From positions 1 through 64,000 of the IMG/VR virus record IMGVR_UViG_3300033997_000136: a stretch of DNA of 64,000 nucleotides. The stretch is one strand, 5' to 3'. The stretch's first letter is position 1, and every line of letters starts with the position of its first letter. Positions 29,450 to 55,859 of this stretch are shown here, piece by piece. The position numbers and the translations under genes are program-made. The notes below the pieces were generated by a model that saw only the letters and a list, made by a program, of their open reading frames with translations, was not told where the DNA came from and made no database searches.

Positions 29450-30757
29450 ATGTCGATTATGACCAGCCTTTTTCAGCAAGCGTTTTCATCAGATTTAACG
29501 CTTCAAAACCTTCGTTATCAACCTAACCGTGATTTCTTCATTGCACTTACTGCTTGTTTTAAAACAATGAAAGAGATGGTGAGTAAAAAGTCATCTGTCA
29601 ATGAAGATGCGTTAAGCGTCGGTAGTAATATCGAAAAGGTTGTGTTTGATTATACAGGGATGCAGATTGATTTTAAATCTTCAGAAATGTATGGTTATAA
29701 CGCCTATGTTATCCCTGCTGACTTAGACAAAAATAATGTGTTATTAGCAGGACGTAACCCAGAATGGTGGGCGACTTCTAAAGAAGCAAAGAAGCATCTG
29801 AAAAAAGCAGATGAACAACCAGTCATTGGTGTTGTCAACACATCTACAGGAAAAGTATCAGGTGTGTACAGTCAAGTAACCGCTGAAGTATTTATTGCTA
29901 AACAAATTTTAGCGGATGAACGATTCACTCCTGAACTTTGTGCTGCTATCTTTGCGCATGAGTTAGGACACAACTTCACGTACTTCCTTTACATGGGTCG
30001 AGTGTTAACTGCATCTCACGTCATGGCTCAATTAAGTTCTGCGTTTAAAGAAATAGATTCAGAACAAGAACGTGCTGAGTTTATTCTTGCAGCAGCTAAA
30101 AAGTTAGATGTTGAAGTAGATGTGTCGGGGCTTGCTAAGTACGATGATGTGTCTATTACACAAACAGTGCTTATTACTCAATACCAGCGACAAGTGTGTA
30201 GTGCAACAAATACAGAGTTCCATGATGAACGGACATGGGAAGCGTTAGCTGACCAGTATGTATCTCGTTTAGGTGCTCCTGTTGAGCTTGCAAAAGGCTT
30301 AGACCTTATTATGCGTATGTACGGTGACCCATCCTACCGCACAACGTTTAAACACATTATGTTAGAAACTGTAGCTGTGACGGCAGTCACGTTGCTAACT
30401 GCTGGAATTTTACCGCTATTACTTATCATAGTGGGAGTTACAGGTGGTCGTTCAACTGAACTGTACGACAGCACACCAAAACGATTTGAACGTATTCGTT
30501 TAGATATTGTTCAACAGTTAAAGCAAAAGAAACTACCAGCCGAATTACGCGAACGTCTGCTCAATGAATTAAAAGACATGGATAAACTTATGTCTGCTGT
30601 CACTGAAAGACAACATGCGTTTGATGCGATGTTTGAGTTCTTCTCAAGCAATACCCGCAGAGGTAGAGCGCGTGCTGGAGTCATTCAAGACCTTGAGAAG
30701 CTTGCAAACAATGAACTGTTTGCGTTTCATCACAGGTTCAATCAATTAAATAAATAA
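29450..30757 (+). CDS. Virion protein with zinc metallopeptidase motif (phiKZ gp83-like)
   Basis: FAHELGH (HExxH), downstream EALADQY, hydrophobic hairpin at about aa 305-331, N-terminal TLQ|N. Confidence 0.75.
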   Translation: MSIMTSLFQQAFSSDLTLQNLRYQPNRDFFIALTACFKTMKEMVSKKSSVNEDALSVGSNIEKVVFDYTGMQIDFKSSEMYGYNAYVIPADLDKNNVLLAGRNPEWWATSKEAKKHLKKADEQPVIGVVNTSTGKVSGVYSQVTAEVFIAKQILADERFTPELCAAIFAHELGHNFTYFLYMGRVLTASHVMAQLSSAFKEIDSEQERAEFILAAAKKLDVEVDVSGLAKYDDVSITQTVLITQYQRQVCSATNTEFHDERTWEALADQYVSRLGAPVELAKGLDLIMRMYGDPSYRTTFKHIMLETVAVTAVTLLTAGILPLLLIIVGVTGGRSTELYDSTPKRFERIRLDIVQQLKQKKLPAELRERLLNELKDMDKLMSAVTERQHAFDAMFEFFSSNTRRGRARAGVIQDLEKLANNELFAFHHRFNQLNK

Positions 30758-30768
30758 AAGGGTTTGTT

Positions 30769-31227
30769 ATGAAACAACGTGAAATTGTAGGTGCTATTAA
30801 CTCATTAGTGAGTGCAGCAAAACAAAACATGGGTCAAGACTTTGACGCTAAAAGTGCAGTAACTGGTTTCGTAGCACACTACGTCTCTATTCAGTTGGCG
30901 TTACCCACTGAAGCTGTAGGTAATCCGAAAGATTACTATATCCAAAACGTATTTATGCGTGCTGTGGATATGCTTGGTAAAATCAACGAGTGCTATGCAA
31001 TCAACATCAATGCTGCTCGCGACTGCGTGTACAACATGTGGTTATTACGTTACAGCATCGTCCATCAACCGTTTTCAAATGAAGGTCTTGCTGCAATGAC
31101 CTCTGCATTACAGGAATCGCCATTGACTGTTGCAGACGCATATACTGCGGTAGCCAAGTCATGTGGTAATCAGTACGTGTCTTATTTGAAGTTTGCGTTA
31201 GACCAAGCTGCTGAACTGCATCAGTAA
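30769..31227 (+). CDS. Small virion protein (phiKZ gp84-like)
   Basis: 152 aa directly after the gp83-like gene. Confidence 0.6.
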   Translation: MKQREIVGAINSLVSAAKQNMGQDFDAKSAVTGFVAHYVSIQLALPTEAVGNPKDYYIQNVFMRAVDMLGKINECYAININAARDCVYNMWLLRYSIVHQPFSNEGLAAMTSALQESPLTVADAYTAVAKSCGNQYVSYLKFALDQAAELHQ

Positions 31228-31239
31228 TTTTATCTATAC

Positions 31240-31272
31240 AGAGAAGTGGGGTTCCACTTCTCTTATTTTTTG
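31240..31272 (+). terminator. Intrinsic terminator
   Basis: agagaagtgg-ggtt-ccacttctct then tattttttg. Confidence 0.75.
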
Positions 31273-31294
31273 TTTTTGAAAATAGGTAACCACT

Positions 31295-33883
31295 ATGATT
31301 TATCTTCGTCAAGCTTTTACTCAACAAAACCATTTACCCGATGAAGCGGAGTATCTGGATGAAATGTTTCCATCTGACGATTTACTGCATCATGCGGATG
31401 AAATTAAAGACTTGGTTGCTGAGACTATCACCCCTGATGAATTCACAACAAAGGTTCCCGGTGTTTATCGTGTCAGTGTTGAAGACGGTGACATCACACT
31501 TCAAGCAGATTGGGGTCGTATCTTAGCGATTGGTGTATTGATTGCTGGTGCGATTGCAATTGCAATTGGTATCATGCGTTCTCGCGAAGAAAGAAGCCGT
31601 GCAGAAGCATTAGAAAATGCAATTAATAAAACTGCTGATGAATTGAATAACATGTTCAAGGACTTAGGTACACAATACCACATGCAGGAGAGTGAACTTA
31701 AGGCGGCAATGGAAACCACAAACGATGCTTTAAATGCTGCGTTTAAACGTGCTACAGCAACACAAGGTGATGCGTACATTACGTATGTCAGAACATTAGA
31801 AAAAGGGAACTCGTTTAATGGTGTGATTAGTGATGTTAACACCAAAATTAGACAAGGTCTTGAAACCGTAAAGAAAACGCTTGACAAACAAGCACAAGCA
31901 AGTAGTGTATCTCAATTAGATGCATTAAAATCAGCCGAGAAGACGTTAGAAGATTATCGTCAAAAGCTGTTTGCGCATCAAGCGTGGCCTGAAGGCAATA
32001 CTCAAACTACAGATGATTTTAAATCGTTCTTAAAGAAAGCAATGACTGACCCATTGGTTCGTCGTTATTTGTTAGGAATGGATTTAAACTCATTAGTAAA
32101 ACCGCTGAGTTTATTTGACCAGGGTGATTCTAAGCAAATCAAAAAGTTACTTGACGATTGCGATATTACCTTAAAACGAATGAAGGATAAGAAAGTCGCA
32201 GATGGTGTGATGGACGACTTCAGAGAAACTAAAGACGCAATGACTCGTGTAACAGCACTGTGTTCTGAGCTTCAAAAGTTCCGTGATTTACACGTTAATG
32301 CGCTTATTGCGCTTGTAACTCAAATGGGTCGTGAAAAGAAAGACGCTTTACGTACCCAAGCGCAAATCATTCAATACGGTACACAGTTAGCCAAAGCGCA
32401 GACTCCAGAACAGCGTCAGGAAATGTTAGACGCTTTAAAGGGTCGTGAGTTATCTGAACTGTCTGATGATGAATTTGCAGAGATGGTGAAAAAGTATGCT
32501 GCGTTTCGTATCCGTAAAGACGGTACGATGCAGTCTGAACATCCAGAAGCCTCATTGCAAAGTACACGCACTGGGTTCTTTTATGACCCAGATACAAGTG
32601 TTGGTTCGATGTTAAATGACGCTCAAGCGTTTGATGAACTAGGTTCTGAAGAGCAGTTAAATATTGCTGATGCGCAAAGTAAATCAGAAATTGCGTGTAA
32701 CCATTTAACTCATTTAGAAGCGATTGTTCAAAGTGCGTTTGAAAAAGGTACAGTGTGTCGTCAAACGGTTGAATTGTTAACTGAAACTCACGGTGCATTC
32801 TTACCACCTTCTTACCCAGCAAAATCGTTTACGCTTCAGGAAACTGAACAAAACATTGATGTATTTAAAGAAGCAACCCTTCTGAAAAAGAACTCAGTGT
32901 TGACGGCTCTCATGGGTACAACGGCGTCGATGTTAGGTGCTATTCAATCGTACATGACAAAGAATCAATACGAGCCTTTGTTAAATGCCATTGAAGATTT
33001 AAACAATCAATGTACCGATGCCTTGGGTAGTGTTGTGGATTATGAAGTTGTTGCGGCGACACTGTTTACTCAATTCAATGGAATGTTTGAGAAATCAGCA
33101 GTGGCTAAATCCGTGTTCTCAACGTACCACCCTATGGCAAGTACCGCATACACAGGTAAACTGTTATCTGCTCGTGAAAAAGTGGTGGATGCACTCAAAG
33201 ACTTAATTGAAGTTGGTGAAGATTTGATTAAGTTAGCAGAAGGAATTGATTCAGGTAAATACCTGAAGAATGTTCCACTGTTAGATATTCCTAACAGTAC
33301 GCGTGAAGTGGGTAACTTATCACTGGTTCGTGAAAAGGATGCGGGATTTGTTGAAGAGCTAATCGACGTTCGTGACGACTTTGGTGATATCGACACCAGT
33401 TCATTAGAATCTGATGTGACTGCGTTAGATGTACATCTTCCGTTTAACAACACAGAATTGTCTATAGTTCGTGAACAGCTAATGACTGATGTTCTGCCGT
33501 ACGAAGAGTGGGCTGAATATGTGATGGCAAGTTTAACGTTAGATGTGATGATGCCTCGTCGTTTAGTCGACAGCGGTACGTTACAACAATCTGACTACTT
33601 AAATGAAGTAATCACAAAGTTAAACGATTTAGCGTTCAAAGGGAAAAAACCTCACTACGCACTTGCAAACGACATCCATGATTTTAGCTTAAAAGCAAAA
33701 GAGTTATCTATCTTCTGTGTTAAGTTAGAGAACCATGTGAAAGTTGCTTTAACGGTGTACACGAAGCTTATTAATACAAAAGCTTCTGTAGTAGATGTGC
33801 TTTACAAAGAAAAGGACAATTCAATTAAAGCACTTGACGTAAGAACCTTAGCAACACTTGTAAAAGCTGTGATTAACAAATAG
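31295..33883 (+). CDS. Large internal head/ejection protein, apparent two-unit polyprotein
   Basis: 862 aa; propeptide-like N-terminus (TQQ|N, TLQ|A) then a TM segment; second propeptide-like unit from M412 (TMQ|S, SLQ|S, PAKSFT motif). Confidence 0.7.
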   Translation: MIYLRQAFTQQNHLPDEAEYLDEMFPSDDLLHHADEIKDLVAETITPDEFTTKVPGVYRVSVEDGDITLQADWGRILAIGVLIAGAIAIAIGIMRSREERSRAEALENAINKTADELNNMFKDLGTQYHMQESELKAAMETTNDALNAAFKRATATQGDAYITYVRTLEKGNSFNGVISDVNTKIRQGLETVKKTLDKQAQASSVSQLDALKSAEKTLEDYRQKLFAHQAWPEGNTQTTDDFKSFLKKAMTDPLVRRYLLGMDLNSLVKPLSLFDQGDSKQIKKLLDDCDITLKRMKDKKVADGVMDDFRETKDAMTRVTALCSELQKFRDLHVNALIALVTQMGREKKDALRTQAQIIQYGTQLAKAQTPEQRQEMLDALKGRELSELSDDEFAEMVKKYAAFRIRKDGTMQSEHPEASLQSTRTGFFYDPDTSVGSMLNDAQAFDELGSEEQLNIADAQSKSEIACNHLTHLEAIVQSAFEKGTVCRQTVELLTETHGAFLPPSYPAKSFTLQETEQNIDVFKEATLLKKNSVLTALMGTTASMLGAIQSYMTKNQYEPLLNAIEDLNNQCTDALGSVVDYEVVAATLFTQFNGMFEKSAVAKSVFSTYHPMASTAYTGKLLSAREKVVDALKDLIEVGEDLIKLAEGIDSGKYLKNVPLLDIPNSTREVGNLSLVREKDAGFVEELIDVRDDFGDIDTSSLESDVTALDVHLPFNNTELSIVREQLMTDVLPYEEWAEYVMASLTLDVMMPRRLVDSGTLQQSDYLNEVITKLNDLAFKGKKPHYALANDIHDFSLKAKELSIFCVKLENHVKVALTVYTKLINTKASVVDVLYKEKDNSIKALDVRTLATLVKAVINK

Positions 33884-33888
33884 AAATA

Positions 33889-33919
33889 AAGAGAAGGGTG
33901 GCAATGCCACCCTTCTCTT
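33889..33919. terminator. Bidirectional terminator hairpin
   Basis: aagagaagggtggc-aat-gccacccttctctt between converging genes. Confidence 0.75.
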
Positions 33920-33921
33920 CT

Positions 33922-36867
33922 CTATACGTTGATTTGTTCTTGATGTGGTAAGAACTCAACAATCACACCATCGATAATACTAATCGTACCATCACCTAAT
34001 AAGGTTAGTGATTTTGCTAAGTTAATCTTACTATCAACATCGACAACAGTGACAATCTCAAAGTTGTTATCTGCACCACCTAAACCTGTAACCAAAACAT
34101 CGATAATCTCTGTTGTGGTTCCATTTCTTATTTCAGACACAATGTCGTTGATACGAATTGTTGTCTGTTGTAAGACCTTGGCGATTGCAGTACGAGCTAA
34201 TCGAGCTAATGGTTCACGCAAATCAAGATTCTTTAAATTCTCTTCTGTTAAGTAAAACGCAACAGAGAAGTTTTGTCGAGAATCAATCGTTGTAATGACA
34301 CCTTCTTTTACTCGAACACGCACATCACCGGCTGTGGTTTTTGGTGTATACCAAAGCTTCGTGTTTTCTAACAAATCTCGATTGTAACGAGGTATCTCAG
34401 ATGTGACCCACGCAACAAGTGTGTTGATAGAATCATCACGGTACAAGTTTGCAGCAGCATCCGTTGTAATCGTAAACAATCCTTCAAACAACACGACGTC
34501 CACTTGAACCATCATGCTACGAGAATGTTCATAAACAATATCACCGTTATCATCGTACTTGATATCACCAATCTCGTGTTCAAAGATAACGTGACCATTC
34601 TCATCCAACATCACATCGCCTTGATTGTGTTTTATTTGTCGACTGAGCTTTTGCGTAGCCGCATCGTAATACACAATATCAAAACCACGTTCATCGGTGA
34701 CATAAACCGTCCTATCCCATACCTTCGGAATATTCTCAGTATAACGTCGAGGTTCGCCACTACCCACAACAACACGACTACGATTCCACAGGTAATCCAG
34801 ATAACGACCAAATTGTATTGTCAGACGTTCCTGCACAACACCATACGCAGTTTCAGGGAGTAAGAAATACTTAGAGATTGTATCAATCTCTGAACGCGTC
34901 ATTCCTGTCACATTGTAATCACTGACACTGAATATCAGTTCAAACGAGGTGATAAGTTCAGCTAAGAAATTTCTATCCGCAGTATCTGCCATAAAGAAGT
35001 TCTTTACAGCAAGTTGATGTGTGGTGTTGATATCAAAATCAGTAACGACTCTAAATTCATACACACGTTCACCTTCCGCTGTTTTAGCAAGAAGCGTACC
35101 ATTTACGCCAGCGTACGATACATCGTTGCGCGGTTTAAATAATAACTGTGCATGGACTTGAGTATCCGCCATTGCTTTGACTATATCGCCAGAGATGGTA
35201 GCAACCACTAAGCGATAACCGTATGCCGTTTTCTCAATAGCCAGCGCACCAGATGCTAGTTGAAGTTGTAATGTTTCATTTTGTTGAATGAACTCACGAC
35301 GAACAACAGATGGTTTGTCCATGTAGTACGCACGACTGGTAAATTCGTTATCTGTTAAATCAAGAACCATGTGAAATGGATTGTAGTAATAATCTTTCGT
35401 TGAGTATTCATTGATAAGACTATCACCTTGCAACTGAGAAAGTCGGTCTATTTCAAACTGACTGACTAAACGAAGCACACCATCTTCTATGGTAAACAAA
35501 CTTCCTGATTTCATAACTAGCTTCTCACCCACGTCAATCACCGTAGGAGCACTTGCAATCGTCTCATACGTCGCTTGAAGCGTTTTAGCAACCACACCCA
35601 TAGGTGAGTTCACAATCGTCGAAGCAGGAGCAGGGAGCGCCTTTGTAGCTAAGAATATACGGTTTGTTAAATTATCTACATGACGAATCAGTTGATAATC
35701 ACGTTCCGCTAAATCCAATTCCAACTGTTTAAAGGATTTCTTCTCAGAGTTACCCACAGCACCGTATATCACTTGCTCGCGAAGCTCTTCAAAGGTTAAA
35801 CCGTTTGTACCACCTGTTAATATCGAATCAGAGAAATACGTCTTTGTTGGAATAGCTCGCCATGCATTGACGTAATTGTTGCCAAGTGCACTTAAATCAT
35901 TCCATGTGACATCAAACATACCAGGGCTGTAACGTTGTAAGTTAACGGTCACATCACCTAGCGTCGTATAAATGTCAACACGAATGTTACTCTTCACCAA
36001 CCCTTTCGTTAGATACACCTGAGGGATACGAACGTTAAGTTGACCTTCAAGTACACGAAGCACTGCAGTCACTCGGTTTTCATCATACACTTGGTCTGAA
36101 TGCGTCGTGTACATCTCAACCCACTCATCTGTATTGGTCCGATGGTAGACTCGTGCGTAGAAGAATTTATCAACCAACGTATAGGTTTTATTAAACCCTG
36201 TTGAAAGATTCATTTGGTCTGAAAAAGACGCATTGTTAAATTGCAGCAGTGGAATTTGAATGGCAATAATTTCTTGACCAACAAACGCAGTCATTGCTTC
36301 GGGTGCAATAAACGTGTAACTGTCTACAATGTTACTTTCGAGCGTTTGAATAGGCGATGGCTTCTCATTGTCATACATGACTTGAATAGCACCATGTGGC
36401 ATTACACGGATATCAATCGGGTATTGCAACGACAACACAATGTTGTCTACTCGAAAGAATGTATCTCGTGGTATGGTCACTTTACGAATACCACCATCAG
36501 CAATCGCCGCTTGTCGCACTTCTTGTGCTGGAACCATAATGGTAATAACCGTTTGACCTGGTGTGTCAAAACGGTCTTTGTAGTTTACATCACTCATGTG
36601 ACCATACAAGTCAGTCATGGTTTGAGATAAACTTGGATAGATGCGACGAGCAACGACTTCACCTCGCACAAGCGCAGCACAACTTGTCGCTGTAATCGCT
36701 TCAATACAAAATGGGAAAGGAGCTGCTGCTGATAAAACATCATATTCCGCATCAGACGGAGTTTGTGTGTTGTAGTGGTCAATAGCTCCATAAATCACAC
36801 GCTTTACAGCAGCAGGATTTGCACGCAAGTCAATACTTGCTTTAATAAGGTCAGCAACAGTTGTCAT
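33922..36867 (-). CDS. Large virion structural protein, baseplate-wedge-like (phiKZ gp87-like)
   Basis: About 980 aa; GGTNGLTFEELREQVI resembles wedge GG..E motifs; TAATG coupling with the upstream gene. Confidence 0.7.
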   Translation of the reverse strand: MTTVADLIKASIDLRANPAAVKRVIYGAIDHYNTQTPSDAEYDVLSAAAPFPFCIEAITATSCAALVRGEVVARRIYPSLSQTMTDLYGHMSDVNYKDRFDTPGQTVITIMVPAQEVRQAAIADGGIRKVTIPRDTFFRVDNIVLSLQYPIDIRVMPHGAIQVMYDNEKPSPIQTLESNIVDSYTFIAPEAMTAFVGQEIIAIQIPLLQFNNASFSDQMNLSTGFNKTYTLVDKFFYARVYHRTNTDEWVEMYTTHSDQVYDENRVTAVLRVLEGQLNVRIPQVYLTKGLVKSNIRVDIYTTLGDVTVNLQRYSPGMFDVTWNDLSALGNNYVNAWRAIPTKTYFSDSILTGGTNGLTFEELREQVIYGAVGNSEKKSFKQLELDLAERDYQLIRHVDNLTNRIFLATKALPAPASTIVNSPMGVVAKTLQATYETIASAPTVIDVGEKLVMKSGSLFTIEDGVLRLVSQFEIDRLSQLQGDSLINEYSTKDYYYNPFHMVLDLTDNEFTSRAYYMDKPSVVRREFIQQNETLQLQLASGALAIEKTAYGYRLVVATISGDIVKAMADTQVHAQLLFKPRNDVSYAGVNGTLLAKTAEGERVYEFRVVTDFDINTTHQLAVKNFFMADTADRNFLAELITSFELIFSVSDYNVTGMTRSEIDTISKYFLLPETAYGVVQERLTIQFGRYLDYLWNRSRVVVGSGEPRRYTENIPKVWDRTVYVTDERGFDIVYYDAATQKLSRQIKHNQGDVMLDENGHVIFEHEIGDIKYDDNGDIVYEHSRSMMVQVDVVLFEGLFTITTDAAANLYRDDSINTLVAWVTSEIPRYNRDLLENTKLWYTPKTTAGDVRVRVKEGVITTIDSRQNFSVAFYLTEENLKNLDLREPLARLARTAIAKVLQQTTIRINDIVSEIRNGTTTEIIDVLVTGLGGADNNFEIVTVVDVDSKINLAKSLTLLGDGTISIIDGVIVEFLPHQEQINV

Positions 36868-37844
36868 TATATCCACCACGTTATTTCACGAGTCACTAAG
36901 TCAATATGCGGATAACCACGCATACTCCCAGTTGTTGCTAATTCAAACGGAGTCATTTTACGATACGTTGCTTGACGAGAACCATCTCGCATTGCACCGT
37001 TAAACATACACACCGTTAAATTAAATTCTTCAAGCAATACAGGAACGTCATACTCCGCCCATAAACAATGGAATGGGATGGAGATTTGGTCCATGTTACG
37101 AATACCACCATCTTCACGGTTGTAATCCATAAACGCACCGGTGCTATCTGCCATTGGCACAGCACCAATCATGCAACCTATTTTAGATACATACCGTTTA
37201 TCTTCAGACAACACAATTCGCCAAATACGACCCCAGTAATCCATCTCACGAAGCATAGAGTGTTCTGGGTAAGGTGTCATGTCTCCTGTATACACTGCAC
37301 CTTGGTACGTCACCCAAGGAAGCATTAACTTACTTACTGGGTCACCACGTGTATTGGCAAAGTTCATGGTTAGCTGATACGTGCCATTTAGTTCAGCAAC
37401 GTCATCTGCCATAGACCACACTTCTTTACGAATCCCTTCTGGTGAAGTGTAATAGTTCATTGTCGCTTCAGGCCATCCGGTGCAGGAGATACATGTGTTG
37501 GTGATAATAGGAATAAAGGCTTGTTTGATGTCAAACAAATCACTCCCTATTTGTGCACCAATAATAGGGTCTAGCATACATCTTATAGCCCTGTATATCG
37601 ACTGTCGGTCGTCAGATAAAAGTGGCGTTAATTTTTGAACACCAGTGACATTGTCATGCGATAAATTCATACGAGGACGCGTTACCAACAACATCCCTTG
37701 CTCATCAGAGTTTTTTGGGAATAAAGTACCTACTCCTTGGTGGTCTAATCCCCAGAAAATATCTGTCAGTGCGGAATTGGGTCGACCAATGCCACTGGCG
37801 GAGACGATATCGTCTAGAATTGTTCTGTTGTCTACGTTACTCAT
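36867..37844 (-). CDS. Virion structural protein (phiKZ gp88-like, tube/baseplate-like)
   Basis: 325 aa; TRPRMNLS and GWP motifs; paired with gp87-like and divergent from gp89-like. Confidence 0.7.
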   Translation of the reverse strand: MSNVDNRTILDDIVSASGIGRPNSALTDIFWGLDHQGVGTLFPKNSDEQGMLLVTRPRMNLSHDNVTGVQKLTPLLSDDRQSIYRAIRCMLDPIIGAQIGSDLFDIKQAFIPIITNTCISCTGWPEATMNYYTSPEGIRKEVWSMADDVAELNGTYQLTMNFANTRGDPVSKLMLPWVTYQGAVYTGDMTPYPEHSMLREMDYWGRIWRIVLSEDKRYVSKIGCMIGAVPMADSTGAFMDYNREDGGIRNMDQISIPFHCLWAEYDVPVLLEEFNLTVCMFNGAMRDGSRQATYRKMTPFELATTGSMRGYPHIDLVTREITWWI

Positions 37845-37873
37845 TTATTTTTTAACCTCATATGGAGTCTGTG

Positions 37874-39007
37874 ATGAGCACCAATAAAAGTACCTACGAG
37901 ATAGTGACTGACTTGGCTTATTTCTTAAGTCAACACTCAGGAAACTCGTTAATCGAATATACAGCCCCGGCGCGCGCTATGCCCATCACACAAGTGGATA
38001 CTCGCGCAGGCCAACTTCCTTACATTGAATCTGTTCTTCATTCGATGGTTAGCATTTATGCAGGATATTACTTACAAGCATGGCAGTTGTCATTGAATGT
38101 AGGTAATGTGGATGTAATTCGTACACTGGATAAACTGAATCCAAACCGTGACCCACTGTCTGGTGTAAAAGGTGGTCGTTTAGGTGGCTTTACGTTACAA
38201 CACGACATGTCAGCGTTACCGTTTGGCGTCGAGTCTGTTTATCCACCTAAAGCAGATAACTACACTCAGAAAAATCAATCACTGGCCGCAACACTGGGTG
38301 AAGCCGGTGCACAAGAACCACAGTCTGCTCAAATTGACCGTGACTTCTTAAAACAGCATAACGAAAACGCAAATCTATCGGTAGGTAAGATTTTATCTTT
38401 AACGGTAGAAAGTGAAAACGGTGCTAAAGCGGCTATTCCTGTGTTGGTTCAGTTGCAAGTTAGCAACGTTCAACCTGCTCTGATGGTTCATACATTAACG
38501 CTGAGCTATAAAGAAGATAAGACGCTGACAAGTCGTTTCCGCGAATGGCGTGCAGGTATGATTTCAGGCATCAACGATTTATTGTTCTGTGATGACTTGA
38601 TTCTTGAATACCGTAAAAATCTTCATGCAGATAAAGATGGTCATTTCCGTCAACGTCAACGTGCTTCGTCAAAGAACACAGCTGCTGCTATTTTAAGTGG
38701 CACACCATCTGTGGGCACTGCATCGTCTATTTATGTGATGGTTCAACAAACTGCATCTGAGTTAGAATTAAAACTCAAAGGCCGTTTGTCTGATTTCAGA
38801 ACACGTGAAAAGTTATTCGATGAAACCAAAGGTATGTTGTTGGTTGTTATCGATGACGAGTGGCAACGTGTTACGGTATACCATCGTTCTATTGAACGTC
38901 CGACTGAAGTCAGCGTCAAAGAAATTCAACGCAAGAACAAACAAAACGGTCCTGACATTCTGGAAGTATTGAATCAATACAACCAGCGTCAAAGTCCTGT
39001 GATTTAA
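37874..39007 (+). CDS. Abundant inner head protein (phiKZ gp89-like)
   Basis: GGAG SD then ATG 37874; LNPNR motif followed by TLQ|H; ENANLSVGK motif. Confidence 0.75.
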   Translation: MSTNKSTYEIVTDLAYFLSQHSGNSLIEYTAPARAMPITQVDTRAGQLPYIESVLHSMVSIYAGYYLQAWQLSLNVGNVDVIRTLDKLNPNRDPLSGVKGGRLGGFTLQHDMSALPFGVESVYPPKADNYTQKNQSLAATLGEAGAQEPQSAQIDRDFLKQHNENANLSVGKILSLTVESENGAKAAIPVLVQLQVSNVQPALMVHTLTLSYKEDKTLTSRFREWRAGMISGINDLLFCDDLILEYRKNLHADKDGHFRQRQRASSKNTAAAILSGTPSVGTASSIYVMVQQTASELELKLKGRLSDFRTREKLFDETKGMLLVVIDDEWQRVTVYHRSIERPTEVSVKEIQRKNKQNGPDILEVLNQYNQRQSPVI

Positions 39008-40499: not shown

Positions 40500-40540
40500 G
40501 TTGTTTCAACTTTAAATTGCAATTTACTGGAGTAAAATTT

Positions 40541-41833
40541 ATGACATTATTCGCACAAGCGTTTAGCCAGCAATCTGCTGAACCGGAACTGGTTGAAGGT
40601 CAAGAAGATTTAGCAACTGTTGCCCAGCTGGAAGAAGACAATGGCGAGCTGGTTGAAGCCGCTGCCGAAGTCGAAAAAGAAGCCAACATGCAATCTGACC
40701 TGGAAGAGCGCGTTGAAGTTGCTGAAGAAATCCAAACTACACTGCAGGGCATGGTTTCTGCTGGTGAAGGTATGGACCGTCGTACTGCTTTGGCCTACCA
40801 ACAAGCCTTTAAAGGTCTGATTGGTACTGTGTTACCTAACCCGGTCGGTACTGTTGAAAACTTTGGCGGTGACGCCCAGCGTTTAGAAGCTACTAAGCGC
40901 ACTCTGCAAGGTATCGCTGATACCCTGAAGAAAATCTGGGAAGCCATCAAAGCTGCCGTAGTTCGTGGTATCGCTGCCATTAAAGATTTCTTCGCCAAAC
41001 TGTTCGGTGGCACTGACTCGCTGAAAAAGCGTGCAGAAGCTCTGCGTAAGAAAATCGCTGATGCTAAATCTGAAGGTAAAGAAGCTCCTTCTGAGAAAAT
41101 CAAAGTGTCTGGCGGTGTACGTCTGCACGTTAGCGGTTCTATGGAACCAAGCGCAGTTAAAACTGGTTTAGCATTGGCTGCCAACGAAATCTCTGAAACA
41201 GCCAACAAGTTGTTAGAAGGTGCTGGTGATTATTACCAAACCCTGGCCAAAGATTTGAAGTCAACCAACGAATCAGTGGTTGAAAAGTTCATCAGCAAAG
41301 GCACTAAGAACAACATTGATAAATCAGTTGCTTCTCTGGGTTCAGCTGTATCATTGGCTCTTCGCATGAAAGGCAAACCATTGCCAGGCGGTAAGGCTAT
41401 CATTGTTGAAGTAGGTTCAAACAGCGAAGAAGAGAAATCTTTAGCTGGCAAAATCTACATCGGCGATGCACCGAAGGCTGAGTGGAAAGAATCTACCGAA
41501 GTAGCTGCACCATCTCTGGCTGATTTAGAAGCGATGTTAACCAGCATCGAATCGATGATCGCTAAAATGGAAGGCGAGAAGAAAGATGCTGAGAAATTAG
41601 CTTCTGACCGTGACGCCGCCATCAAAGCTGGTGACGAACTGATCAAAGCTGGTGAAGCTGGTAAGTTATCTCAGTCATGGGACCAGGCTAAACTGTCTGC
41701 TGCTCTGCGTCTGACTAACATGTCTTTCAACCGCACTCTGTCTTCTCTGAACAGCTACCTGTTCGGTGTGAGCCGTGCTGGTCTGCAGTACGTTGATAGC
41801 TGTGTATCTTCTTACAAGAAGAAAGCAGCTTAA
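40541..41833 (+). CDS. Highly expressed internal head protein of the phiKZ gp93-97 paralog family
   Basis: Acidic propeptide, then NFGG...EAT..TLQ|GIADTLKKIWEAIK family motif; strong codon bias; GGAG SD then ATG 40541. Confidence 0.8.
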   Translation: MTLFAQAFSQQSAEPELVEGQEDLATVAQLEEDNGELVEAAAEVEKEANMQSDLEERVEVAEEIQTTLQGMVSAGEGMDRRTALAYQQAFKGLIGTVLPNPVGTVENFGGDAQRLEATKRTLQGIADTLKKIWEAIKAAVVRGIAAIKDFFAKLFGGTDSLKKRAEALRKKIADAKSEGKEAPSEKIKVSGGVRLHVSGSMEPSAVKTGLALAANEISETANKLLEGAGDYYQTLAKDLKSTNESVVEKFISKGTKNNIDKSVASLGSAVSLALRMKGKPLPGGKAIIVEVGSNSEEEKSLAGKIYIGDAPKAEWKESTEVAAPSLADLEAMLTSIESMIAKMEGEKKDAEKLASDRDAAIKAGDELIKAGEAGKLSQSWDQAKLSAALRLTNMSFNRTLSSLNSYLFGVSRAGLQYVDSCVSSYKKKAA

Positions 41834-41873: not shown

Positions 41874-41902
41874 GCACTCAGGGGCAACCCTGAGTGTTTT
41901 TA
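41874..41902 (+). terminator. Intrinsic terminator with GCAA tetraloop
   Basis: gcactcaggg-gcaa-ccctgagtgt then tttt. Confidence 0.8.
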
Positions 41903-41935
41903 TTCGTCATTTTAGTTGACTTGGAGTTTAGTGCG

Positions 41936-43177
41936 ATGACATTTTCTACTGACGAATTAACACATGCTGAACTAATAGCTCCTCAAGTGCAGGGTGCTGT
42001 TCATGAGGCAGACATGTTATCAGAAACATTTGAGCAAAGCTGCACTGTGTTGTCTGAATTAAATACCCCTGATGAATTGTCTCTGCAATCACGTCGTCTT
42101 TGTCACACTACTCTGCAAGGTATGGTTCATCATCACGGTTTAGATATAACACTGCAGTTTGAGAACACAGACGGTAGTTTAAAAGAAACAGCTACTCGTA
42201 TCAGCATTAGTGCAGCAAAAGCAATCGTCGCTGCAGGTGAGATGGCGTGGGGTAATCTTGCAGACATGTATGTTCGTAGTCTAGCAGATACAACAACAAT
42301 TCGTGGTTACTTGAGTAAATTAAATAATCGCATGGATTATACTCAAGGAAAAGAACAAGGCGATGAGGTGTTAACCTTTAAAGGGTTATGGTACACGTTA
42401 AGCGTAGATGGTAAGAATCCACGTGATGCTCGTGATATTCTACTTAACATCAATCGCATGACAGAAACATGTGATGCAGTTCTTAACAAATGGACTAAGG
42501 AAATTGAAACGGCTGGTAATTTATTTTTAAAGGTAGTAAAGAAATACGACCCTGCTGAAATGAATAGCGAGTTAGTTTTACGTGACTTAGTACAAGCTGC
42601 TGAGAAGTTAGACTTTGGTTATCTGCAACGTATTTTAAAAGTAAACAAAATCACAGACCCTCGTTATGAAGGTCATGTGTACAAGAGTGAACCTTTAAGT
42701 GGTGATTACTCATTGTTTATTTATCGTCCTGATTTATTTGTGTCTACTAAAGCAGATACTGTAAAACGCGCTGTATCGCTTCGTCGTCGCACATTTAAAA
42801 TACAGCGAACTCATCCCACCTATCGTGTAAAACTCGATGAGGTGAAGATACAGGCGCTTTCGGTGGATGATGTCGCAGAGATACGTGAATCGATTAAAAA
42901 GCTAATGGATGTGTTAGAAAGTTATGACCGCAGTGGACGTGGTAAGGCGATAGTGAAGATTGGTGAACAGATTCAAGGTCATCTTAAGAACGAGATGAAT
43001 TTCCTTGAACGAAATGTAGAGTTTCTTTCTGGGAACTACACAGCCAGTGTGTATCGTTTTTCAAATGCATACATGCGCTGGGCATCCGACCCAATGAGTG
43101 GATTGATTTCACAAGCCATGGCATTAAGTCGTGCCGCAATTAAAGTGTGTAACGCAAGTTTATCAGCTTATCAATAA
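41936..43177 (+). CDS. Internal head protein paralog (gp93-97-like)
   Basis: GGAG SD then ATG 41936; SLQ|S, TLQ|G, TLQ|F in the first 75 aa; LSGDYSL and RAAIKVC family-like motifs. Confidence 0.7.
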   Translation: MTFSTDELTHAELIAPQVQGAVHEADMLSETFEQSCTVLSELNTPDELSLQSRRLCHTTLQGMVHHHGLDITLQFENTDGSLKETATRISISAAKAIVAAGEMAWGNLADMYVRSLADTTTIRGYLSKLNNRMDYTQGKEQGDEVLTFKGLWYTLSVDGKNPRDARDILLNINRMTETCDAVLNKWTKEIETAGNLFLKVVKKYDPAEMNSELVLRDLVQAAEKLDFGYLQRILKVNKITDPRYEGHVYKSEPLSGDYSLFIYRPDLFVSTKADTVKRAVSLRRRTFKIQRTHPTYRVKLDEVKIQALSVDDVAEIRESIKKLMDVLESYDRSGRGKAIVKIGEQIQGHLKNEMNFLERNVEFLSGNYTASVYRFSNAYMRWASDPMSGLISQAMALSRAAIKVCNASLSAYQ

Positions 43178-53675: not shown

Positions 53676-55859
53676 ATGAGTACAAAACAACGTTTCTCCA
53701 AAGCTTTATCAGCAATGCTGGGTCGAGTGGAAGAATCCCTGAAACAAAATGCACCGCAATTCCAGGACAAGTTTTACAGTGCAATGACACTGCAAAGCGA
53801 CGCCGCCAACTTCGACGATGAAGAGCTGAAAAACACTCAGACTTCTATTGCTGAAGAGCTGGTGACTATGGCCAACGAAGTCGATGCCGAGTTAATCGAA
53901 AAAGACGAACTTGAGCCACTGACTGTTCAATCTGCCGCTATCAAAGCTGGTCTGATGATTTCTGCATTATACGGCAACACCAACGCTGCTGGTAAATATG
54001 CTAAAGCCGCATTAACCAACAGAAAGACTGGTGATGACGTTATCACGTTACAAAGCATCCAGTTTGGTCCTGGTGGTGAAGTTGAAGTAGCACGTCATGG
54101 TGACTACACGCAACAATCATTCGACAACAACGAACTGGGTAAATACATTCCACGTTCAGTATTGTTTAACGTGTTAGCCAGCCGCCAAGACCGTTTCGGT
54201 GAAGCATGGTTCCCAACTCACGTTATGGCTCCATCAGAATCAGGTTTAGCGATCACTGTTGAGCGTCAGGAAGTCATCAGCTTCGCTACTCGCGATGCCA
54301 ATGGTAAGCCAATCTCTATCCCGCGTAAATCGCTGGTGAAAGCATTTAAAGACCACAAAATTTTAAGCCGCCCTTCTACTGAGCTGGTGCCGTTTGTTTC
54401 TGCTGAAAACGACGTGTACATGATTGACGAAGCGCTGGTCGGTAACCGCAACTTCCCAGTTGGCGATGCGAACATCGTAACTCGTCCGCTGAAAATCGGC
54501 ACTGAAGTAAACATGTTGGGTGTGTCTAACTCTCCAACTCTGTTACAAGGTGGTGTGTTAAACACGACTGACGAAATGGCCGTGGGTGGTGGCGTAAAAG
54601 CACTGTACGTATCTTTCACAGATGGTACTGCTACTGAAGTATTCAGCTTCAACACTGAAATGGCTTCACGTAACCAATTCAACCCAGCGCCGCAAGGCAA
54701 AGACCGTGACATTCAGTTAATGATGCCTGCGGTAACGTTGATTCTGGATAAGAACAGCAAACTGCACAGCGACGTTGACTCTACTTTGTTAGCCCGTATC
54801 AAAACGGATGACCTGGTTGTTAAGTTAACTGTAGCAGTCACTGGTTACGGTTCTCTGCAAACTTCAAACGTTGTGGTCAACGCTGCCAAAATCAACGTGG
54901 TTGAAGTGGTCAACGCTGCCAAAGAAAGCCTGCCTCTGGGTGATGGTGTAGGTAAAGAAATCGCTGATTTAATCAACGGTTTAGCACCACAAGCAATCGC
55001 ATGGGACCCAATGTTCCGTCGTTCAAACACCAACTGGCGTACTCTGGGTGACTTAGTTGATGTATCATCTTACAGCATGATCATCGACGTACAACCAGGC
55101 TACCCACTGGCAGTTATCAGTTCTACTGAAGAAGAACAACACGGTATGAAGTTAGCTGGTATCATTAACGCTAACCGTGCTCGTACTTCAAACTCAGCAG
55201 TAACTACACTGATTAACTACGTAGACCACTTAGGTGCACAAACCGAAGCTCTGCGTCGTGGTGTGGATGTTGATATCGCAGGTCAAGGTAAGTGGTTAAT
55301 CACTCCGTACCATGCTGAAGTGAACTGTGACGTTGTAGACCGCGTTCGTAACCGTCGTAGCGGTGAGTTAGTGCAAGATATTTGCTGGGTACTGGTAGAT
55401 GCTATCCGTGACGCAGCGTATCAGATGTACACTGAATCACAATACGGTACTGTGTTGGAAATGGTGACTGGTTCTCCAGACATGAAACCAACTATCGTTA
55501 TCGGTTGTGACCCAATCACTGAACGTTACTTAAACATCGCTGGCGATACTCGTCTGCTGGGTGATAAGTTTGATGTTCAGGTTGTGTCTACTTACGACGA
55601 CCGTATGTATGACAACGCTGTCGACGAACGTACTCTGTACATGTCATTCACTCGTAAACAGCCAGGTCACTTAGACTGCGCTGGTTTTGGTACTTTCGCT
55701 ATCATTCCTGAAATGATGCAGAAGATCACCATGGACCGTGATGGCACCACTTATACGCAAGACCGCGTGATTCCTCGTCAAATGCACGTACCGGTATTAC
55801 CGTGTGCAACCAAAATGACGATTAAGAACCTGTCTGCTGCTGTAAACGGTCAGATTTAA
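53676..55859 (+). CDS. Major capsid protein precursor (phiKZ gp120-like)
   Basis: 727 aa; SVLFNVLASRQDRFGEAWFPT, RPLKIG, WDPMFRRSNTNWR; very strong codon bias; propeptide of about 147 aa. Confidence 0.92.
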   Translation: MSTKQRFSKALSAMLGRVEESLKQNAPQFQDKFYSAMTLQSDAANFDDEELKNTQTSIAEELVTMANEVDAELIEKDELEPLTVQSAAIKAGLMISALYGNTNAAGKYAKAALTNRKTGDDVITLQSIQFGPGGEVEVARHGDYTQQSFDNNELGKYIPRSVLFNVLASRQDRFGEAWFPTHVMAPSESGLAITVERQEVISFATRDANGKPISIPRKSLVKAFKDHKILSRPSTELVPFVSAENDVYMIDEALVGNRNFPVGDANIVTRPLKIGTEVNMLGVSNSPTLLQGGVLNTTDEMAVGGGVKALYVSFTDGTATEVFSFNTEMASRNQFNPAPQGKDRDIQLMMPAVTLILDKNSKLHSDVDSTLLARIKTDDLVVKLTVAVTGYGSLQTSNVVVNAAKINVVEVVNAAKESLPLGDGVGKEIADLINGLAPQAIAWDPMFRRSNTNWRTLGDLVDVSSYSMIIDVQPGYPLAVISSTEEEQHGMKLAGIINANRARTSNSAVTTLINYVDHLGAQTEALRRGVDVDIAGQGKWLITPYHAEVNCDVVDRVRNRRSGELVQDICWVLVDAIRDAAYQMYTESQYGTVLEMVTGSPDMKPTIVIGCDPITERYLNIAGDTRLLGDKFDVQVVSTYDDRMYDNAVDERTLYMSFTRKQPGHLDCAGFGTFAIIPEMMQKITMDRDGTTYTQDRVIPRQMHVPVLPCATKMTIKNLSAAVNGQI

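What the first reader, a model, noticed from the sequence alone, without database searches (positions are those of the whole stretch)
31295..33883. 862-aa head protein looks like a two-gene polyprotein with an internal propeptide
Seen: unit 1 has a propeptide (TQQ11|N, TLQ70|A), a hydrophobic TM-like segment (WGRILAIGVLIAGAIAIAIGI) and long coiled coils. At aa 411-423 two more sites (TMQ|S, SLQ|S) surround an in-frame Met (ATG 32528, with a TATG about 30 nt upstream). An acidic propeptide-like stretch follows, with the P-x-K-S-F-T motif typical of gp93-97-family N-termini. Inference: two ejection-protein genes fused and are separated by the head protease, or the second unit is also made from an internal start.
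Basis: partly seen in the sequence, partly recalled or inferred. Interest (0 to 1): 0.6.

Follow-up and report, generated by a model that had tools for sequence, protein, structure and literature searches.

The report
Two-module jumbo-phage head protein precursor
This 862-residue gene of a phiKZ-like jumbo phage joins an extra membrane-helix module to the phage's normal "gp86/gp47" inner-head protein, with head-protease cutting motifs between them, so it probably matures into two proteins; this is a new variant of a known, fast-evolving head gene.

Summary
It lies in the chimallivirus head-gene slot between the gp85-like and gp87-like genes, where phiKZ has gp86 and SPN3US has gp47. The C-terminal half (about aa 423-862) is the homolog of the whole stand-alone slot gene of other phages. 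Evidence: hhalign 96% to gp47-like proteins, and phiKZ gp86 (8y6v_G) as the best structural match of 48,161 chains, Z 9.4.

The N-terminal half (aa 1-413) is an extra module found only in this clade: leader, acidic propeptide, T-L-Q70, one strong TM helix, then helices. No stand-alone relative was found. One relative carries it twice in tandem.

A roughly 70-residue low-confidence linker holds T-M-Q413|S and S-L-Q422|S. All five lineages keep a motif there. The sister phage that uses Glu at its other head-protein sites has T-L-E there. Cleavage into products of about 39 and 49 kDa is therefore likely but not shown.

The internal-start idea fails. Met412 is Thr and the TATG is TACG in close relatives. 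The "PxKSFT" motif belongs to the gp86/gp47 propeptide, not to gp93-97.

Side finding: this phage's prohead protease seems to cut after Gln, not Glu.

The parts
31240..31263 (+). Terminator-like hairpin with a T run between the gp85-like gene and this gene
   Evidence: 10-bp stem followed by TATTTTTTGT. It suggests, but does not show, that the 862-aa gene is transcribed from its own start region.
31295..33883 (+). Single ORF of 862 aa (P0001, 96.3 kDa precursor): head protein at the phiKZ gp86 / SPN3US gp47 slot
   Evidence: ORF list and translation. Synteny: gp84-like 29450-30757 and gp85-like 30769-31227 upstream; gp87-like 33922-36879 (-) downstream. One Logan contig of run X1 spans 31229-33919 with no differences and no indels.
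31295..31327 (+). N-terminal leader M-I-Y-L-R-Q-A-F-T-Q-Q11|N
   Evidence: The same L-x-Q-A-F-[ST]-x-Q type of leader opens the gp84-like and gp92-like (phiKZ_IP) proteins of this phage and its relatives. phiKZ gp93 is cut at SLE-13 (PMC5694885).
31328..31504 (+). Acidic propeptide aa 12-70 (pI 4.05) ending in T-L-Q70|A
   Evidence: The site column is kept in all homologs (T-L-Q, T-L-E in P0006, Y-T-Q-E/Q in P0007/P0008), directly before the TM helix.
31505..31585 (+). The protein's only strong transmembrane-type helix, aa 71-97
   Evidence: Kyte-Doolittle 19-mer maximum 2.79. The same helix is present in all homologs. In stand-alone slot proteins (P0010, PCH45 P0012) the TM helix follows the propeptide cleavage site in the same way; PMC5694885 reports a predicted TM helix at the N-terminus of mature SPN3US gp47.
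31763..32389 (+). Helical core of the N unit, aa 157-365
   Evidence: AlphaFold2 block-mean pLDDT 62-90 here; the rest of the N unit is below 50. The best of 48,161 PDB chains is phiKZ gp86 (8y6v_G): Z 7.8, rmsd 4.0, 177 residues, model 157-365 against chain 201-398. This is weak for a helical protein.
32432..32641 (+). Low-confidence (probably disordered) linker, aa 380-449, between the two units
   Evidence: pLDDT is below 50 at N-unit model residues 380-413 and C-unit model residues 1-36.
32525..32560 (+). Junction protease motifs T-M-Q413|S and S-L-Q422|S; Met412 = ATG 32528
   Evidence: Homologs have T-T-Q/T-L-Q (P0003), T-T-Q-Q/T-L-Q (P0005), T-L-E (P0006), D-M-Q/E-L-Q (P0007) and T-M-Q (P0008). 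Met412 is Thr in P0003.
32495..32498 (+). TATG proposed as an internal promoter element: not conserved
   Evidence: It reads TACG in L005 and L006. T>C at 32497 is seen in run X5 and in a minor contig of X1. TATG occurs 6 times in the gene.
32561..33880 (+). C unit, aa 423-862 (48.7 kDa, pI 4.75): homolog of the stand-alone gp86/gp47-slot protein
   Evidence: phmmer match to P0010. hhalign A3 against A5: 96.4%, E 1e-9. AF2 mean pLDDT 81.7, pTM 0.77, all-alpha. The C units are 29-32% identical across lineages, against 18-23% for the N units.
32675..32971 (+). Region homologous to the N-terminal propeptide region of gp47/gp86-type proteins (aa 461-559), including G-T-V-C-R and L-P-P-S-Y-P-A-K-S-F-T (aa 503-513)
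   Evidence: hhalign aligned columns. In the same register as phiKZ gp86 'EGVS...FTP.RS..N'. Invariant residues: L503 P504 P505 P508 F512 Q519 N520 D522.
32831..32851 (+). Possible further sites T-L-Q515|E and T-E-Q519|N, 7-11 residues before the column of the known SQE-122 (phiKZ) and ALE-111 (SPN3US) cuts
   Evidence: The Q519-N520 pair is invariant in the clade, so it may be structural rather than a cleavage site. At the canonical column P0001 has F-K-E526.
32882..33823 (+). gp86-like all-alpha fold, aa 530-843
   Evidence: VIA-align against 48,161 chains: top hit 8y6v_G (gp86 of the phiKZ capsid), Z 9.4, rmsd 4.2, 235 of 297 residues, model 117-430 against chain 120-392. The chain identity was checked.
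33888..33920 (.). Strong hairpin (15 pairs) between the convergent 862-aa gene and the gp87-like gene

Best explanation
This is one gene, translated from ATG 31295, that encodes a modular precursor of inner-head proteins of a phiKZ-like (Chimalliviridae) jumbo phage.

Module 2 (about aa 423-862) is this phage's version of the fast-evolving slot protein. In phiKZ that protein is gp86, part of the complex bound under the capsid vertices. In SPN3US it is gp47, an essential head protein thought to be ejected.

Module 1 (aa 1-413) is an addition confined to this clade. It consists of an 11-residue leader, an acidic propeptide, a protease site (T-L-Q70), one transmembrane-type helix and a helical body. 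It may be a very diverged in-frame duplicate of the same gene.

The two modules are joined by a flexible linker with one or two motifs of the type this phage's gp175-like prohead protease appears to use (T/S-x-Q, cutting after Gln). The proposed pathway is this. The precursor is taken into the prohead. The protease then removes aa 1-70 and cuts at 413 and/or 422. This leaves a membrane-helix protein of about 39 kDa and a gp86-like protein of about 49 kDa, which may be trimmed to about 38 kDa at 515/519.

Shown here: the anatomy, the homology of module 2, conservation of the motifs, and their Gln/Glu covariation. Inferred: the cleavage itself, the location in the head, and what the fragments do.
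For: Position: the gene sits between the gp85-like and gp87-like genes, as do phiKZ gp86, PhiPA3 gp089, SPN3US gp47, Xoo-sp14 gp4, P0010 and Goslar gp65.

Module 2 belongs to the slot family:
- phmmer: P0010 residues 7-210 match P0001 438-636.
- hhalign: C units against gp47-like proteins, 96.4%, E 1e-9; gp47-like against the gp86 family, 83.6%, E 8e-6, with the known cuts ALE-111 and SQE-122 in one column.
- Structure: confident AF2 model whose best match among 48,161 chains is phiKZ gp86, Z 9.4 over 235 residues, in a register that agrees with the sequence alignment.

Modularity:
- P0008 carries module 1 twice (E 1e-43) with A-T-L-Q380|S between the copies and T-M-Q699|S before module 2.
- Module 1 evolves faster (18-23% identity against 29-32%).
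- The linker is low-confidence in both models.

Cleavage motifs:
- They are present at the junction in every lineage.
- P0006's phage has Glu at both P0006 sites and at four aligned sites in three neighbouring head proteins where this phage has Gln.
- The MCP maturation site E163 (phiKZ) / E130 (SPN3US) aligns with Q147 of T-Q-Q here.
- T-L-Q is enriched in the N-terminal parts of head proteins.
- A gp175-like protease is encoded at G000:177755-178513, and its tail carries Q-type motifs.

Precedent:
- SPN3US gp47 is cut at AVE-79/ALE-111, and a TM helix starts the mature part (PMC5694885).
- The phiKZ capsid paper reports gp162 cut between residues 17/18 and 137/138, with two separate gp162 fragments in the capsid (PMC11297242).
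Against: - No proteomic data exist, so no cleavage is shown.
- T-x-Q is a short motif that is not enriched proteome-wide, and a junction motif has a 12-32% chance per lineage.
- P0007 has only D-M-Q/E-L-Q at the junction.
- In SPN3US all identified protease cuts, apart from the protease's self-cleavage, release only N-terminal propeptides (PMC10052503).
- Goslar gp65, a 934-aa slot protein, is described as having a second folded domain in the vertex complex, with no mention of cleavage.
- At the column of the canonical family cut, module 2 has F-K-E, which is not a Q-type motif.
- Module 1 shows no sequence similarity to anything outside the clade, and its model is poor (mean pLDDT 56.6).
- The structural Z scores (9.4 and 7.8) lie in the range that helical bundles can reach by chance.
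Confidence: 0.6

Rival explanations
1. Two-domain protein that is not cut at the junction. Only the 70-residue N-terminal propeptide is removed, and an 88-kDa membrane-helix plus gp86-like protein stays in one piece, with the linker serving as a flexible tether.
For: Goslar gp65 (934 aa) is reported as a long gp86 homolog with a second folded domain in the vertex complex, with no cleavage mentioned. In SPN3US all identified cuts, apart from the protease's self-cleavage, produce N-terminal propeptides. The junction motif is short and has a 12-32% chance per lineage.
Against: The motif is kept in an otherwise poorly conserved, low-confidence linker in five lineages, and it switches to Glu together with six other sites in P0006's phage. 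P0008 has motifs at both of its unit borders.
Confidence: 0.25
2. Module 1 is an oversized propeptide or scaffold-like targeting domain that is released at 413/422 and then lost from the head. Only the gp86-like module would remain in the virion.
For: In phiKZ and 201phi2-1 the N-terminal fragments of gp86 and gp148 are cleared from the head (PMC5694885). Module 1 evolves fast and is absent from most chimalliviruses.
Against: There is no T-x-Q motif between residues 71 and 410, so the fragment would stay at about 39 kDa, large for escape from a closed shell. The TM helix that other slot proteins keep in their mature part lies in module 1 in every member of this clade, while module 2 has lost it (maximum hydropathy 1.08 against 2.0-2.8).
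Confidence: 0.1
3. The second unit is also made on its own, from an internal start at ATG 32528 driven by a TATG promoter element about 30 nt upstream.
For: ATG 32528 and TATG 32495-32498 exist.
Against: Met412 is Thr (ACA) in P0003 and is absent in P0005 and P0006. The TATG is TACG in both close relatives and in strain variants from the same samples. There is no evident Shine-Dalgarno sequence upstream (AAAGACGGTACG). The gene has 25 in-frame ATGs and 6 TATGs. The stand-alone homologs begin about 25 residues further downstream (P0010 residue 7 = aa 438).
Confidence: 0.03
4. Assembly or sequencing artefact: two adjacent genes merged by a missed stop or frameshift.
For: PCH45 and PhiEaH1 have two separate genes (344-348 and 456-460 aa) in this slot.
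Against: The same fused frame occurs in independent assemblies from different samples and studies: P0002, P0003, P0005, P0006, P0007, P0008. A contig of run X1 spans the whole gene with no indel. The PCH45 upstream gene (P0011) shows no similarity to module 1.
Confidence: 0.01

Closest known systems
SPN3US gp47 (and the PCH45 460-aa, PhiEaH1 456-aa, Xoo-sp14 gp4 and metagenomic P0010 proteins)
   Same: Same genome slot. They share the propeptide motif (G-V-x-R ... Y-P-x-x-S-F-T ... N-x-D-V) with module 2 (hhalign 96%). Their plan of propeptide, protease site, then TM helix at the start of the mature part (PMC5694885) is repeated at the start of module 1.
   Different: Those are single-unit proteins of 416-577 aa cut after Glu. 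Here the sequence motif and the TM helix lie in two different units of one 862-aa chain. Module 2 has no TM helix and no motif at the canonical cut column.
phiKZ gp86 (PDB 8y6v chain G), inner vertex-binding complex protein
   Same: Same slot. It is the best structural match of module 2 (Z 9.4, 235 residues) and also of the module 1 core (Z 7.8). It is linked by profiles through the gp47-like set. It is cut by the head protease at SQE-122.
   Different: gp86 is 422 aa with no TM helix. The direct profile match to module 2 is not significant. The cut is after Glu.
Goslar gp65 (934 aa)
   Same: A long slot protein reported as a gp86 homolog with a second folded domain (bioRxiv 10.64898/2026.04.21.720040). 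Its sequence shows the propeptide motif near the N-terminus and a T-M-E|S motif plus TM helix at about aa 575-610.
   Different: The order is reversed: the gp86-like part comes first and the TM-helix part second. There is no detectable sequence similarity to P0001. Cleavage between its parts is not reported.
phiKZ head proteins cut at internal sites (gp162, gp93)
   Same: One gene product is cut by the prohead protease at more than one site. For gp162 the capsid paper reports cuts between residues 17/18 and 137/138 and two separate fragments in the capsid (PMC11297242).
   Different: Those are not composed of two gene-sized, separately folding units, one of which is a free-standing gene elsewhere.

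Membership tests
gp86/gp47 slot family of chimallivirus head proteins | Gene lies between the gp85-like gene and the convergent gp87-like gene | tested here: met
gp86/gp47 slot family of chimallivirus head proteins | Conserved N-terminal propeptide motif (G-[VI]-[SC]-R ... [YF]-P-x-x-[SA]-F-T ... N-x-x-V) | tested here: met
   Present in module 2 at aa 485-523, inside the chain rather than at its N-terminus. hhalign 96.4%, E 1e-9. Not detectable in module 1.
gp86/gp47 slot family of chimallivirus head proteins | Head-protease site directly after the motif (phiKZ SQE-122, SPN3US ALE-111) | tested here: inconclusive
   The aligned column has F-K-E526, which is not the phage's T-x-Q type. T-L-Q515 and T-E-Q519 lie 7-11 residues upstream.
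gp86/gp47 slot family of chimallivirus head proteins | TM helix at the start of the mature part (gp47-type members) | tested here: not met
   Module 2: maximum hydropathy 1.08 at the aligned place. Module 1 does have it (aa 71-97, 2.79), right after T-L-Q70. phiKZ gp86 itself shows no TM-like segment at the aligned place, so this feature defines only the gp47-type subgroup.
gp86/gp47 slot family of chimallivirus head proteins | All-alpha fold that superimposes on phiKZ gp86 (8y6v_G) | tested here: met
   Module 2: top of 48,161 chains, Z 9.4, rmsd 4.2, 235 of 297 residues; Foldseek found nothing. Module 1: top hit as well, but Z 7.8 on a model with mean pLDDT 56.6, so inconclusive.
gp86/gp47 slot family of chimallivirus head proteins | Present in virions and processed by the prohead protease | not testable with these tools
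   This is an uncultured phage from subsurface metagenomes. No proteome is available.
phiKZ_IP / gp93-97 inner-body protein family (PF12699) | Match to the family profile, with the motif shared with the phage's own gp93-97-like paralogs | tested here: not met
   No Pfam hit for P0001 at E up to 1. PxKSFT is absent from all other ORFs. A self-search of the genome with module 2 finds only itself. Only the 11-residue leader resembles that of the gp92-like IP protein.
Protease-processed polyprotein (functional sense) | Several gene-sized units in one frame, each bordered by the cognate protease's motif, with units occurring as separate genes elsewhere | tested here: inconclusive
   Units and border motifs: met. 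Separate gene elsewhere: met for module 2, not met for module 1. Cleavage: not testable.

The most novel reading that the evidence does not exclude
A clade of uncultured chimalliviruses has re-tuned its prohead protease from cutting after Glu to cutting after Gln, and the cleavage sites of many head proteins have changed with it. In the same clade the gp86/gp47 slot gene has grown by in-frame tandem duplication into a true polyprotein of two or three units, which that protease separates. The membrane-helix function and the capsid-binding function would then end up in different mature proteins.
Probability: 0.4. Interest if true: 0.7.

Novelty: new variant of a known kind. Interest (0 to 1): 0.5.

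Why it matters
The gp86/gp47 slot holds one of the fastest-evolving head genes of nucleus-forming jumbo phages. Its role is debated: capsid vertex brace in phiKZ, essential candidate ejection protein with a membrane helix in SPN3US.

A lineage in which the membrane-helix part and the gp86-like part are separate modules, divided by protease motifs, offers a natural dissection of those two roles. It also shows how the gene changes: by adding, duplicating and shedding whole units.

The accompanying evidence that the head protease of this clade cuts after Gln would, if confirmed, be the first departure from the Glu rule reported for the characterised enzymes (T4, phiKZ, 201phi2-1, SPN3US). It would also give a set of co-varying substrate sites for studying how a viral protease and its many substrates change specificity together. 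In practice, annotators who use the S/A/G-x-E rule would miss every maturation site in such phages.

Tried and rejected
- Pfam and PHROGs scans of the whole protein and of both halves gave nothing usable; the best was phrog_23093, E 0.0016, on the TM helix.
- tblastn of P0001 against 50,697 GenBank phages: no match.
- Word-based protein searches with the protein and with profiles of each unit found only 87-88% relatives and a contig-edge fragment, P0004.
- Two IMG/VR scans returned only an identical contig.
- Direct BLAST against PhiPA3 gp089, the RTH11 627-aa protein, the PCH45 348-aa protein and Goslar gp65: nothing.
- hhalign of the N unit against the C unit, the gp47-like set, the gp86 set and Goslar gp65: no signal. 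Sequence therefore does not support the idea that module 1 is a duplicate of module 2. It rests only on the weak structural hit and on the shared plan of propeptide, site and TM helix.
- Foldseek against the PDB: nothing significant, only faint rows of alpha-pore-forming toxins at E above 0.06.
- ESM Atlas look-alikes: uninformative, because the Atlas model is poor.
- Complex prediction of module 2 with two copies of the gp85-like protein: no verdict, score 0.00. This is evidence neither way.
- Search for the Peptidase_S77 profile in the genome: no hit. The protease was found with phiKZ gp175 instead.
- The contig of P0006's phage could not be searched beyond the 22.5 kb held, so its protease and major capsid protein were not compared.
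- No RNA run holds this phage, and only contigs were available, so transcript starts could not be mapped.
No other genetic code was used.
Full report
WHAT IS THERE. The window is the first 64 kb of a 213,150-bp IMG/VR virus contig. Its genes match the conserved head-gene block of phiKZ-like, nucleus-forming jumbo phages (Chimalliviridae):
- gp84-like, 29450-30757
- gp85-like, 30769-31227
- the ORF in question, 31295-33883
- convergent gp87-like, 33922-36879 (-)
- then gp88- to gp92-like genes and the major capsid protein at 53676-55859.

The ORF is open for 862 codons. It is flanked by terminator-like hairpins at 31240-31263 and 33888-33920. A contig of an independent look at the source runs spans it with no difference and no indel.

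THE SLOT. In phiKZ, PhiPA3 and 201phi2-1 the gene at this place is gp86, gp089 and gp148 (413-422 aa). In SPN3US it is gp47 (573 aa as annotated; four codons longer after the published start revision). In Xoo-sp14 it is a 416-aa gene. In PCH45 and PhiEaH1 there are two genes (344-348 and 456-460 aa). In Goslar there are two genes of 934 and 930 aa.

The literature describes this as a positionally conserved but very fast-evolving head gene.
- SPN3US gp47 is essential and is cut at AVE-79 and probably at ALE-111. Its mature part begins with a predicted TM helix, and it was proposed to be an ejection protein (PMC5694885).
- Goslar gp65 is reported as a gp86 homolog that is "much longer" and has a second folded domain (bioRxiv 10.64898/2026.04.21.720040).

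RELATIVES. Family scans and a tblastn against GenBank phages gave nothing. The word search gave only 87-88% relatives. The exhaustive phmmer search of 1.84 billion representatives was therefore justified. It returned seven proteins:
- P0003 (87% identical).
- P0006 (856 aa), matching end to end at 28%.
- P0005 (824 aa) and P0007 (811 aa), whose best stretches cover the C-terminal half.
- P0008 (1150 aa), whose residues 709-1142 match query residues 425-861.
- P0009 (1399 aa), a weak match (E 1.4e-6) whose best stretch is 41 residues (query 285-325); it was not followed up.
- P0010 (428 aa), whose residues 7-210 match query residues 438-636.

P0002, P0003, P0005, P0006, P0007 and P0008 lie directly after a gp85-like gene and before a convergent gp87-like gene. 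P0010 also follows gp84- and gp85-like genes, but the genes after it are small and were not identified.

MODULE 2 IS THE ORDINARY SLOT GENE. Three kinds of evidence agree.
- A profile of the seven C-terminal halves (A3) matches a profile of P0010, PCH45 P0012, the PhiEaH1 456-aa protein, Xoo-sp14 gp4 and SPN3US gp47 (A5) with 96.4% probability, E 1e-9. The match runs over C-unit residues 48-146 against family residues 35-136. That is the N-terminal propeptide region with G-V-x-R and Y-P-x-x-S-F-T.
- A5 in turn matches the phiKZ gp86 family (A6) at 83.6%, E 8e-6, and the experimentally known cuts ALE-111 and SQE-122 fall in one column.
- AlphaFold2 on A3 gave a confident all-alpha model: mean pLDDT 81.7, pTM 0.77, with only residues 1-36 and 250-266 unreliable. 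Foldseek found nothing. The Foldseek-independent scan of 48,161 chains ranked 8y6v_G first, with Z 9.4, rmsd 4.2 and 235 of 297 residues, model 117-430 against chain 120-392. That chain is phiKZ gp86. The structural register (C-unit 117 against gp86 120) agrees with the sequence register (C-unit 113 against gp86 122).

Z 9.4 alone would be weak for a helical protein. It counts because it is the top hit, covers most of the chain, and agrees with position and profiles.

It does not belong to the gp93-97 paralogs. No other ORF of the contig carries it, and module 2 finds only itself in the genome.

MODULE 1 IS AN ADDITION. Residues 1-413 have no stand-alone relatives in any search. They show no profile similarity to module 2, the gp47-like set, the gp86 set, the extra PCH45 gene or Goslar gp65. 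They are less conserved than module 2: 18-23% identity against 29-32%.

The plan of module 1 nevertheless copies that of gp47-type proteins. An acidic propeptide is followed by a protease motif (T-L-Q70) and then by the only strong TM helix of the chain, aa 71-97. In module 2 the segment aligned with the TM helix of the stand-alone proteins is no longer hydrophobic (1.08 against 2.0-2.8). Every member of the clade therefore has its TM helix in module 1 and the family's sequence motif in module 2.

The AF2 model of module 1 is poor overall (mean pLDDT 56.6) but has a usable core at 157-353. Its best PDB match is again phiKZ gp86 (Z 7.8, 177 residues, collinear). I take this only as a hint that module 1 is an old in-frame duplicate of the slot gene.

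Such duplication does happen in this clade. P0008 carries module 1 twice in tandem (31% identity, E 1e-43).

THE JUNCTION. Both models lose confidence between aa 380 and 449. Within that stretch lie T-M-Q413|S and S-L-Q422|S. The homologs have:
- P0003: T-T-Q and T-L-Q
- P0005: T-T-Q-Q and T-L-Q
- P0006: T-L-E
- P0007: D-M-Q and E-L-Q
- P0008: T-M-Q, plus A-T-L-Q380|S between its two copies of module 1.

A strict [TS]-x-Q/E motif falls in 12-32% of 30-residue windows of these proteins. Four of five lineages having one gives a joint chance of about 0.002. That is suggestive rather than decisive.

IS T-x-Q THE PROTEASE MOTIF? All characterised relatives cut after Glu (PMC5694885 and PMC10052503), so this had to be checked.
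- (a) In a three-way alignment, the maturation sites of the major capsid proteins, G-L-E163|N in phiKZ and A-T-E130|Y in SPN3US, align with T-Q-Q147|S here.
- (b) T-x-Q is not enriched overall (200 against 188). T-L-Q is enriched (31 against 17.7) and concentrates in the first 20-150 residues of the gp84-, gp89- and gp92-like proteins, an IP-like protein and the major capsid protein.
- (c) The phage of P0006 (locus L022) has Glu where this phage and three other relatives have Gln. The aligned pairs are: gp84-like T-L-Q19 against T-L-E; gp89-like T-L-Q113 against K-L-E; gp92-like T-L-Q77 against T-I-E and T-L-Q131 against T-Q-E; and in the protein under study T-L-Q70 against T-L-E72 and S-L-Q422 against T-L-E426. 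The one exception is the leader A-F-S-L-Q|N of its gp92-like protein.
- (d) A gp175-like protease is encoded at G000:177755-178513 (34% identity to phiKZ gp175, E 5e-27). Its C-terminal tail carries Q-L-Q|S, T-M-Q|S and T-A-Q|Q, where the SPN3US enzyme has its AQE/ATE self-cleavage motifs.

The concerted change across four proteins is hard to explain unless these columns are P1 residues of one enzyme. Because the junction motif takes part in it, the junction is probably a real site. I put the Gln specificity at about 0.7 and cleavage at the junction at about 0.6.

THE INTERNAL START. Met412 is the P2 residue of T-M-Q. It is Thr (ACA) in P0003, and it is not kept in P0005 or P0006. The TATG 33 nt upstream is simply the Tyr codon TAT followed by G. 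It is TAC in both close relatives and in variants in runs X1 and X5. The gene has 25 in-frame ATGs and six TATGs, and no Shine-Dalgarno sequence precedes 32528. The stand-alone homologs start about 25 residues further on. No RNA data exist to test it directly.

MECHANISM. The most likely course, with inferred steps marked, is as follows.
1. The 96-kDa precursor is made late from its own start.
2. It is carried into the prohead by its leader and propeptide (inferred from the roles of the T4 capsid-targeting sequence and the SPN3US gp47 propeptide).
3. The protease removes aa 1-70 and cuts the linker (inferred).
4. This leaves aa 71-413/422 (about 39 kDa, pI about 8, TM helix at its new N-terminus) and aa 414/423-862 (about 49 kDa, acidic).
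5. The second product may be trimmed at T-L-Q515 or T-E-Q519 to a 38-kDa piece that matches the resolved part of phiKZ gp86.
6. By homology, that piece would brace the capsid from inside at the vertices. The membrane-helix piece would be the candidate for the host-membrane role proposed for SPN3US gp47.

No step after translation is shown. A fold of module 2 together with the gp85-like dimer gave no verdict.

NOVELTY. These things are already known: long and multi-domain proteins in this slot (Goslar gp65), cuts at more than one site in phiKZ head proteins, and the propeptide, site and TM-helix plan of gp47. These things are new here: the arrangement (an extra, duplicable N-terminal TM module fused upstream of a complete slot gene that keeps its own now-internal propeptide region), the motifs at each unit border, and the Gln-type motif. 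I file it as a new variant of a known kind, of moderate interest. The protease-specificity switch is the more surprising observation and deserves its own follow-up.

Noticed in passing
window 53676-55859 (MCP), 29450-30757, 37862-39007, 40517-41833, 41894-43177; loci L022, L024, L014, L006: Candidate head-protease sites in this phage have Gln at P1 (mostly T-L-Q). The major capsid protein maturation site of phiKZ (E163) and SPN3US (E130) aligns with Q147. In one sister phage (L022) six aligned sites in four proteins carry Glu instead. All characterised relatives cut after Glu.
   Followed up: partly
G000:C1:177755-178513 (+), outside the window (locus L028:1492-2250): gp175-like prohead protease (P0013, 252 aa, 34% identical to phiKZ gp175). 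Its C-terminal tail carries Q-L-Q|S, T-M-Q|S and T-A-Q|Q, at the place where the SPN3US protease has its Glu-type self-cleavage motifs.
   Followed up: partly
L014:4053-7505 (P0008, 1150 aa): A relative carries the N-terminal TM-helix module twice in tandem (31% identity, E 1e-43), with A-T-L-Q380|S between the copies. It is a three-unit version of the same gene.
   Followed up: yes
L029:16884-19688 (-) and L029:14032-16824 (-), Goslar gp65 and gp64: Goslar gp65 (a published gp86 homolog with an extra domain) shows a T-M-E|S motif followed by a TM helix at about aa 575-610, between its two parts. Its neighbour gp64 (930 aa) weakly repeats the slot family's propeptide motif (E 0.02). The slot may therefore hold paralogs in Goslar too.
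   Followed up: partly
L011:3275-4321 and L012:3280-4314 (PCH45, PhiEaH1): These phages have an extra 344-348-aa gene, without a TM helix, exactly where module 1 lies here, directly upstream of their gp47-like gene (4-nt overlap in PCH45). BLAST of P0001 against the PCH45 protein found no similarity to module 1; its origin is unknown.
   Followed up: partly
window 31295-31327, 29450-29510, 40541-40575: Three head proteins (this one, the gp84-like and the gp92-like IP protein) begin with a similar short leader, L-x-Q-A-F-[ST]-x-Q. It may be a shared targeting or first-cut signal, like SLE-13 of phiKZ gp93.
   Followed up: no
window 32471-32523 and 32404-32642: Runs from the source study and from one other study hold strain variants of this gene, including the P0003-like Thr412 form. 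Several close strains therefore co-occur in subsurface metagenomes.
   Followed up: no
window 33888-33920: A 15-pair GC-rich hairpin lies between the convergent 862-aa and gp87-like genes. It has T runs on both sides and is probably a bidirectional terminator.
   Followed up: no
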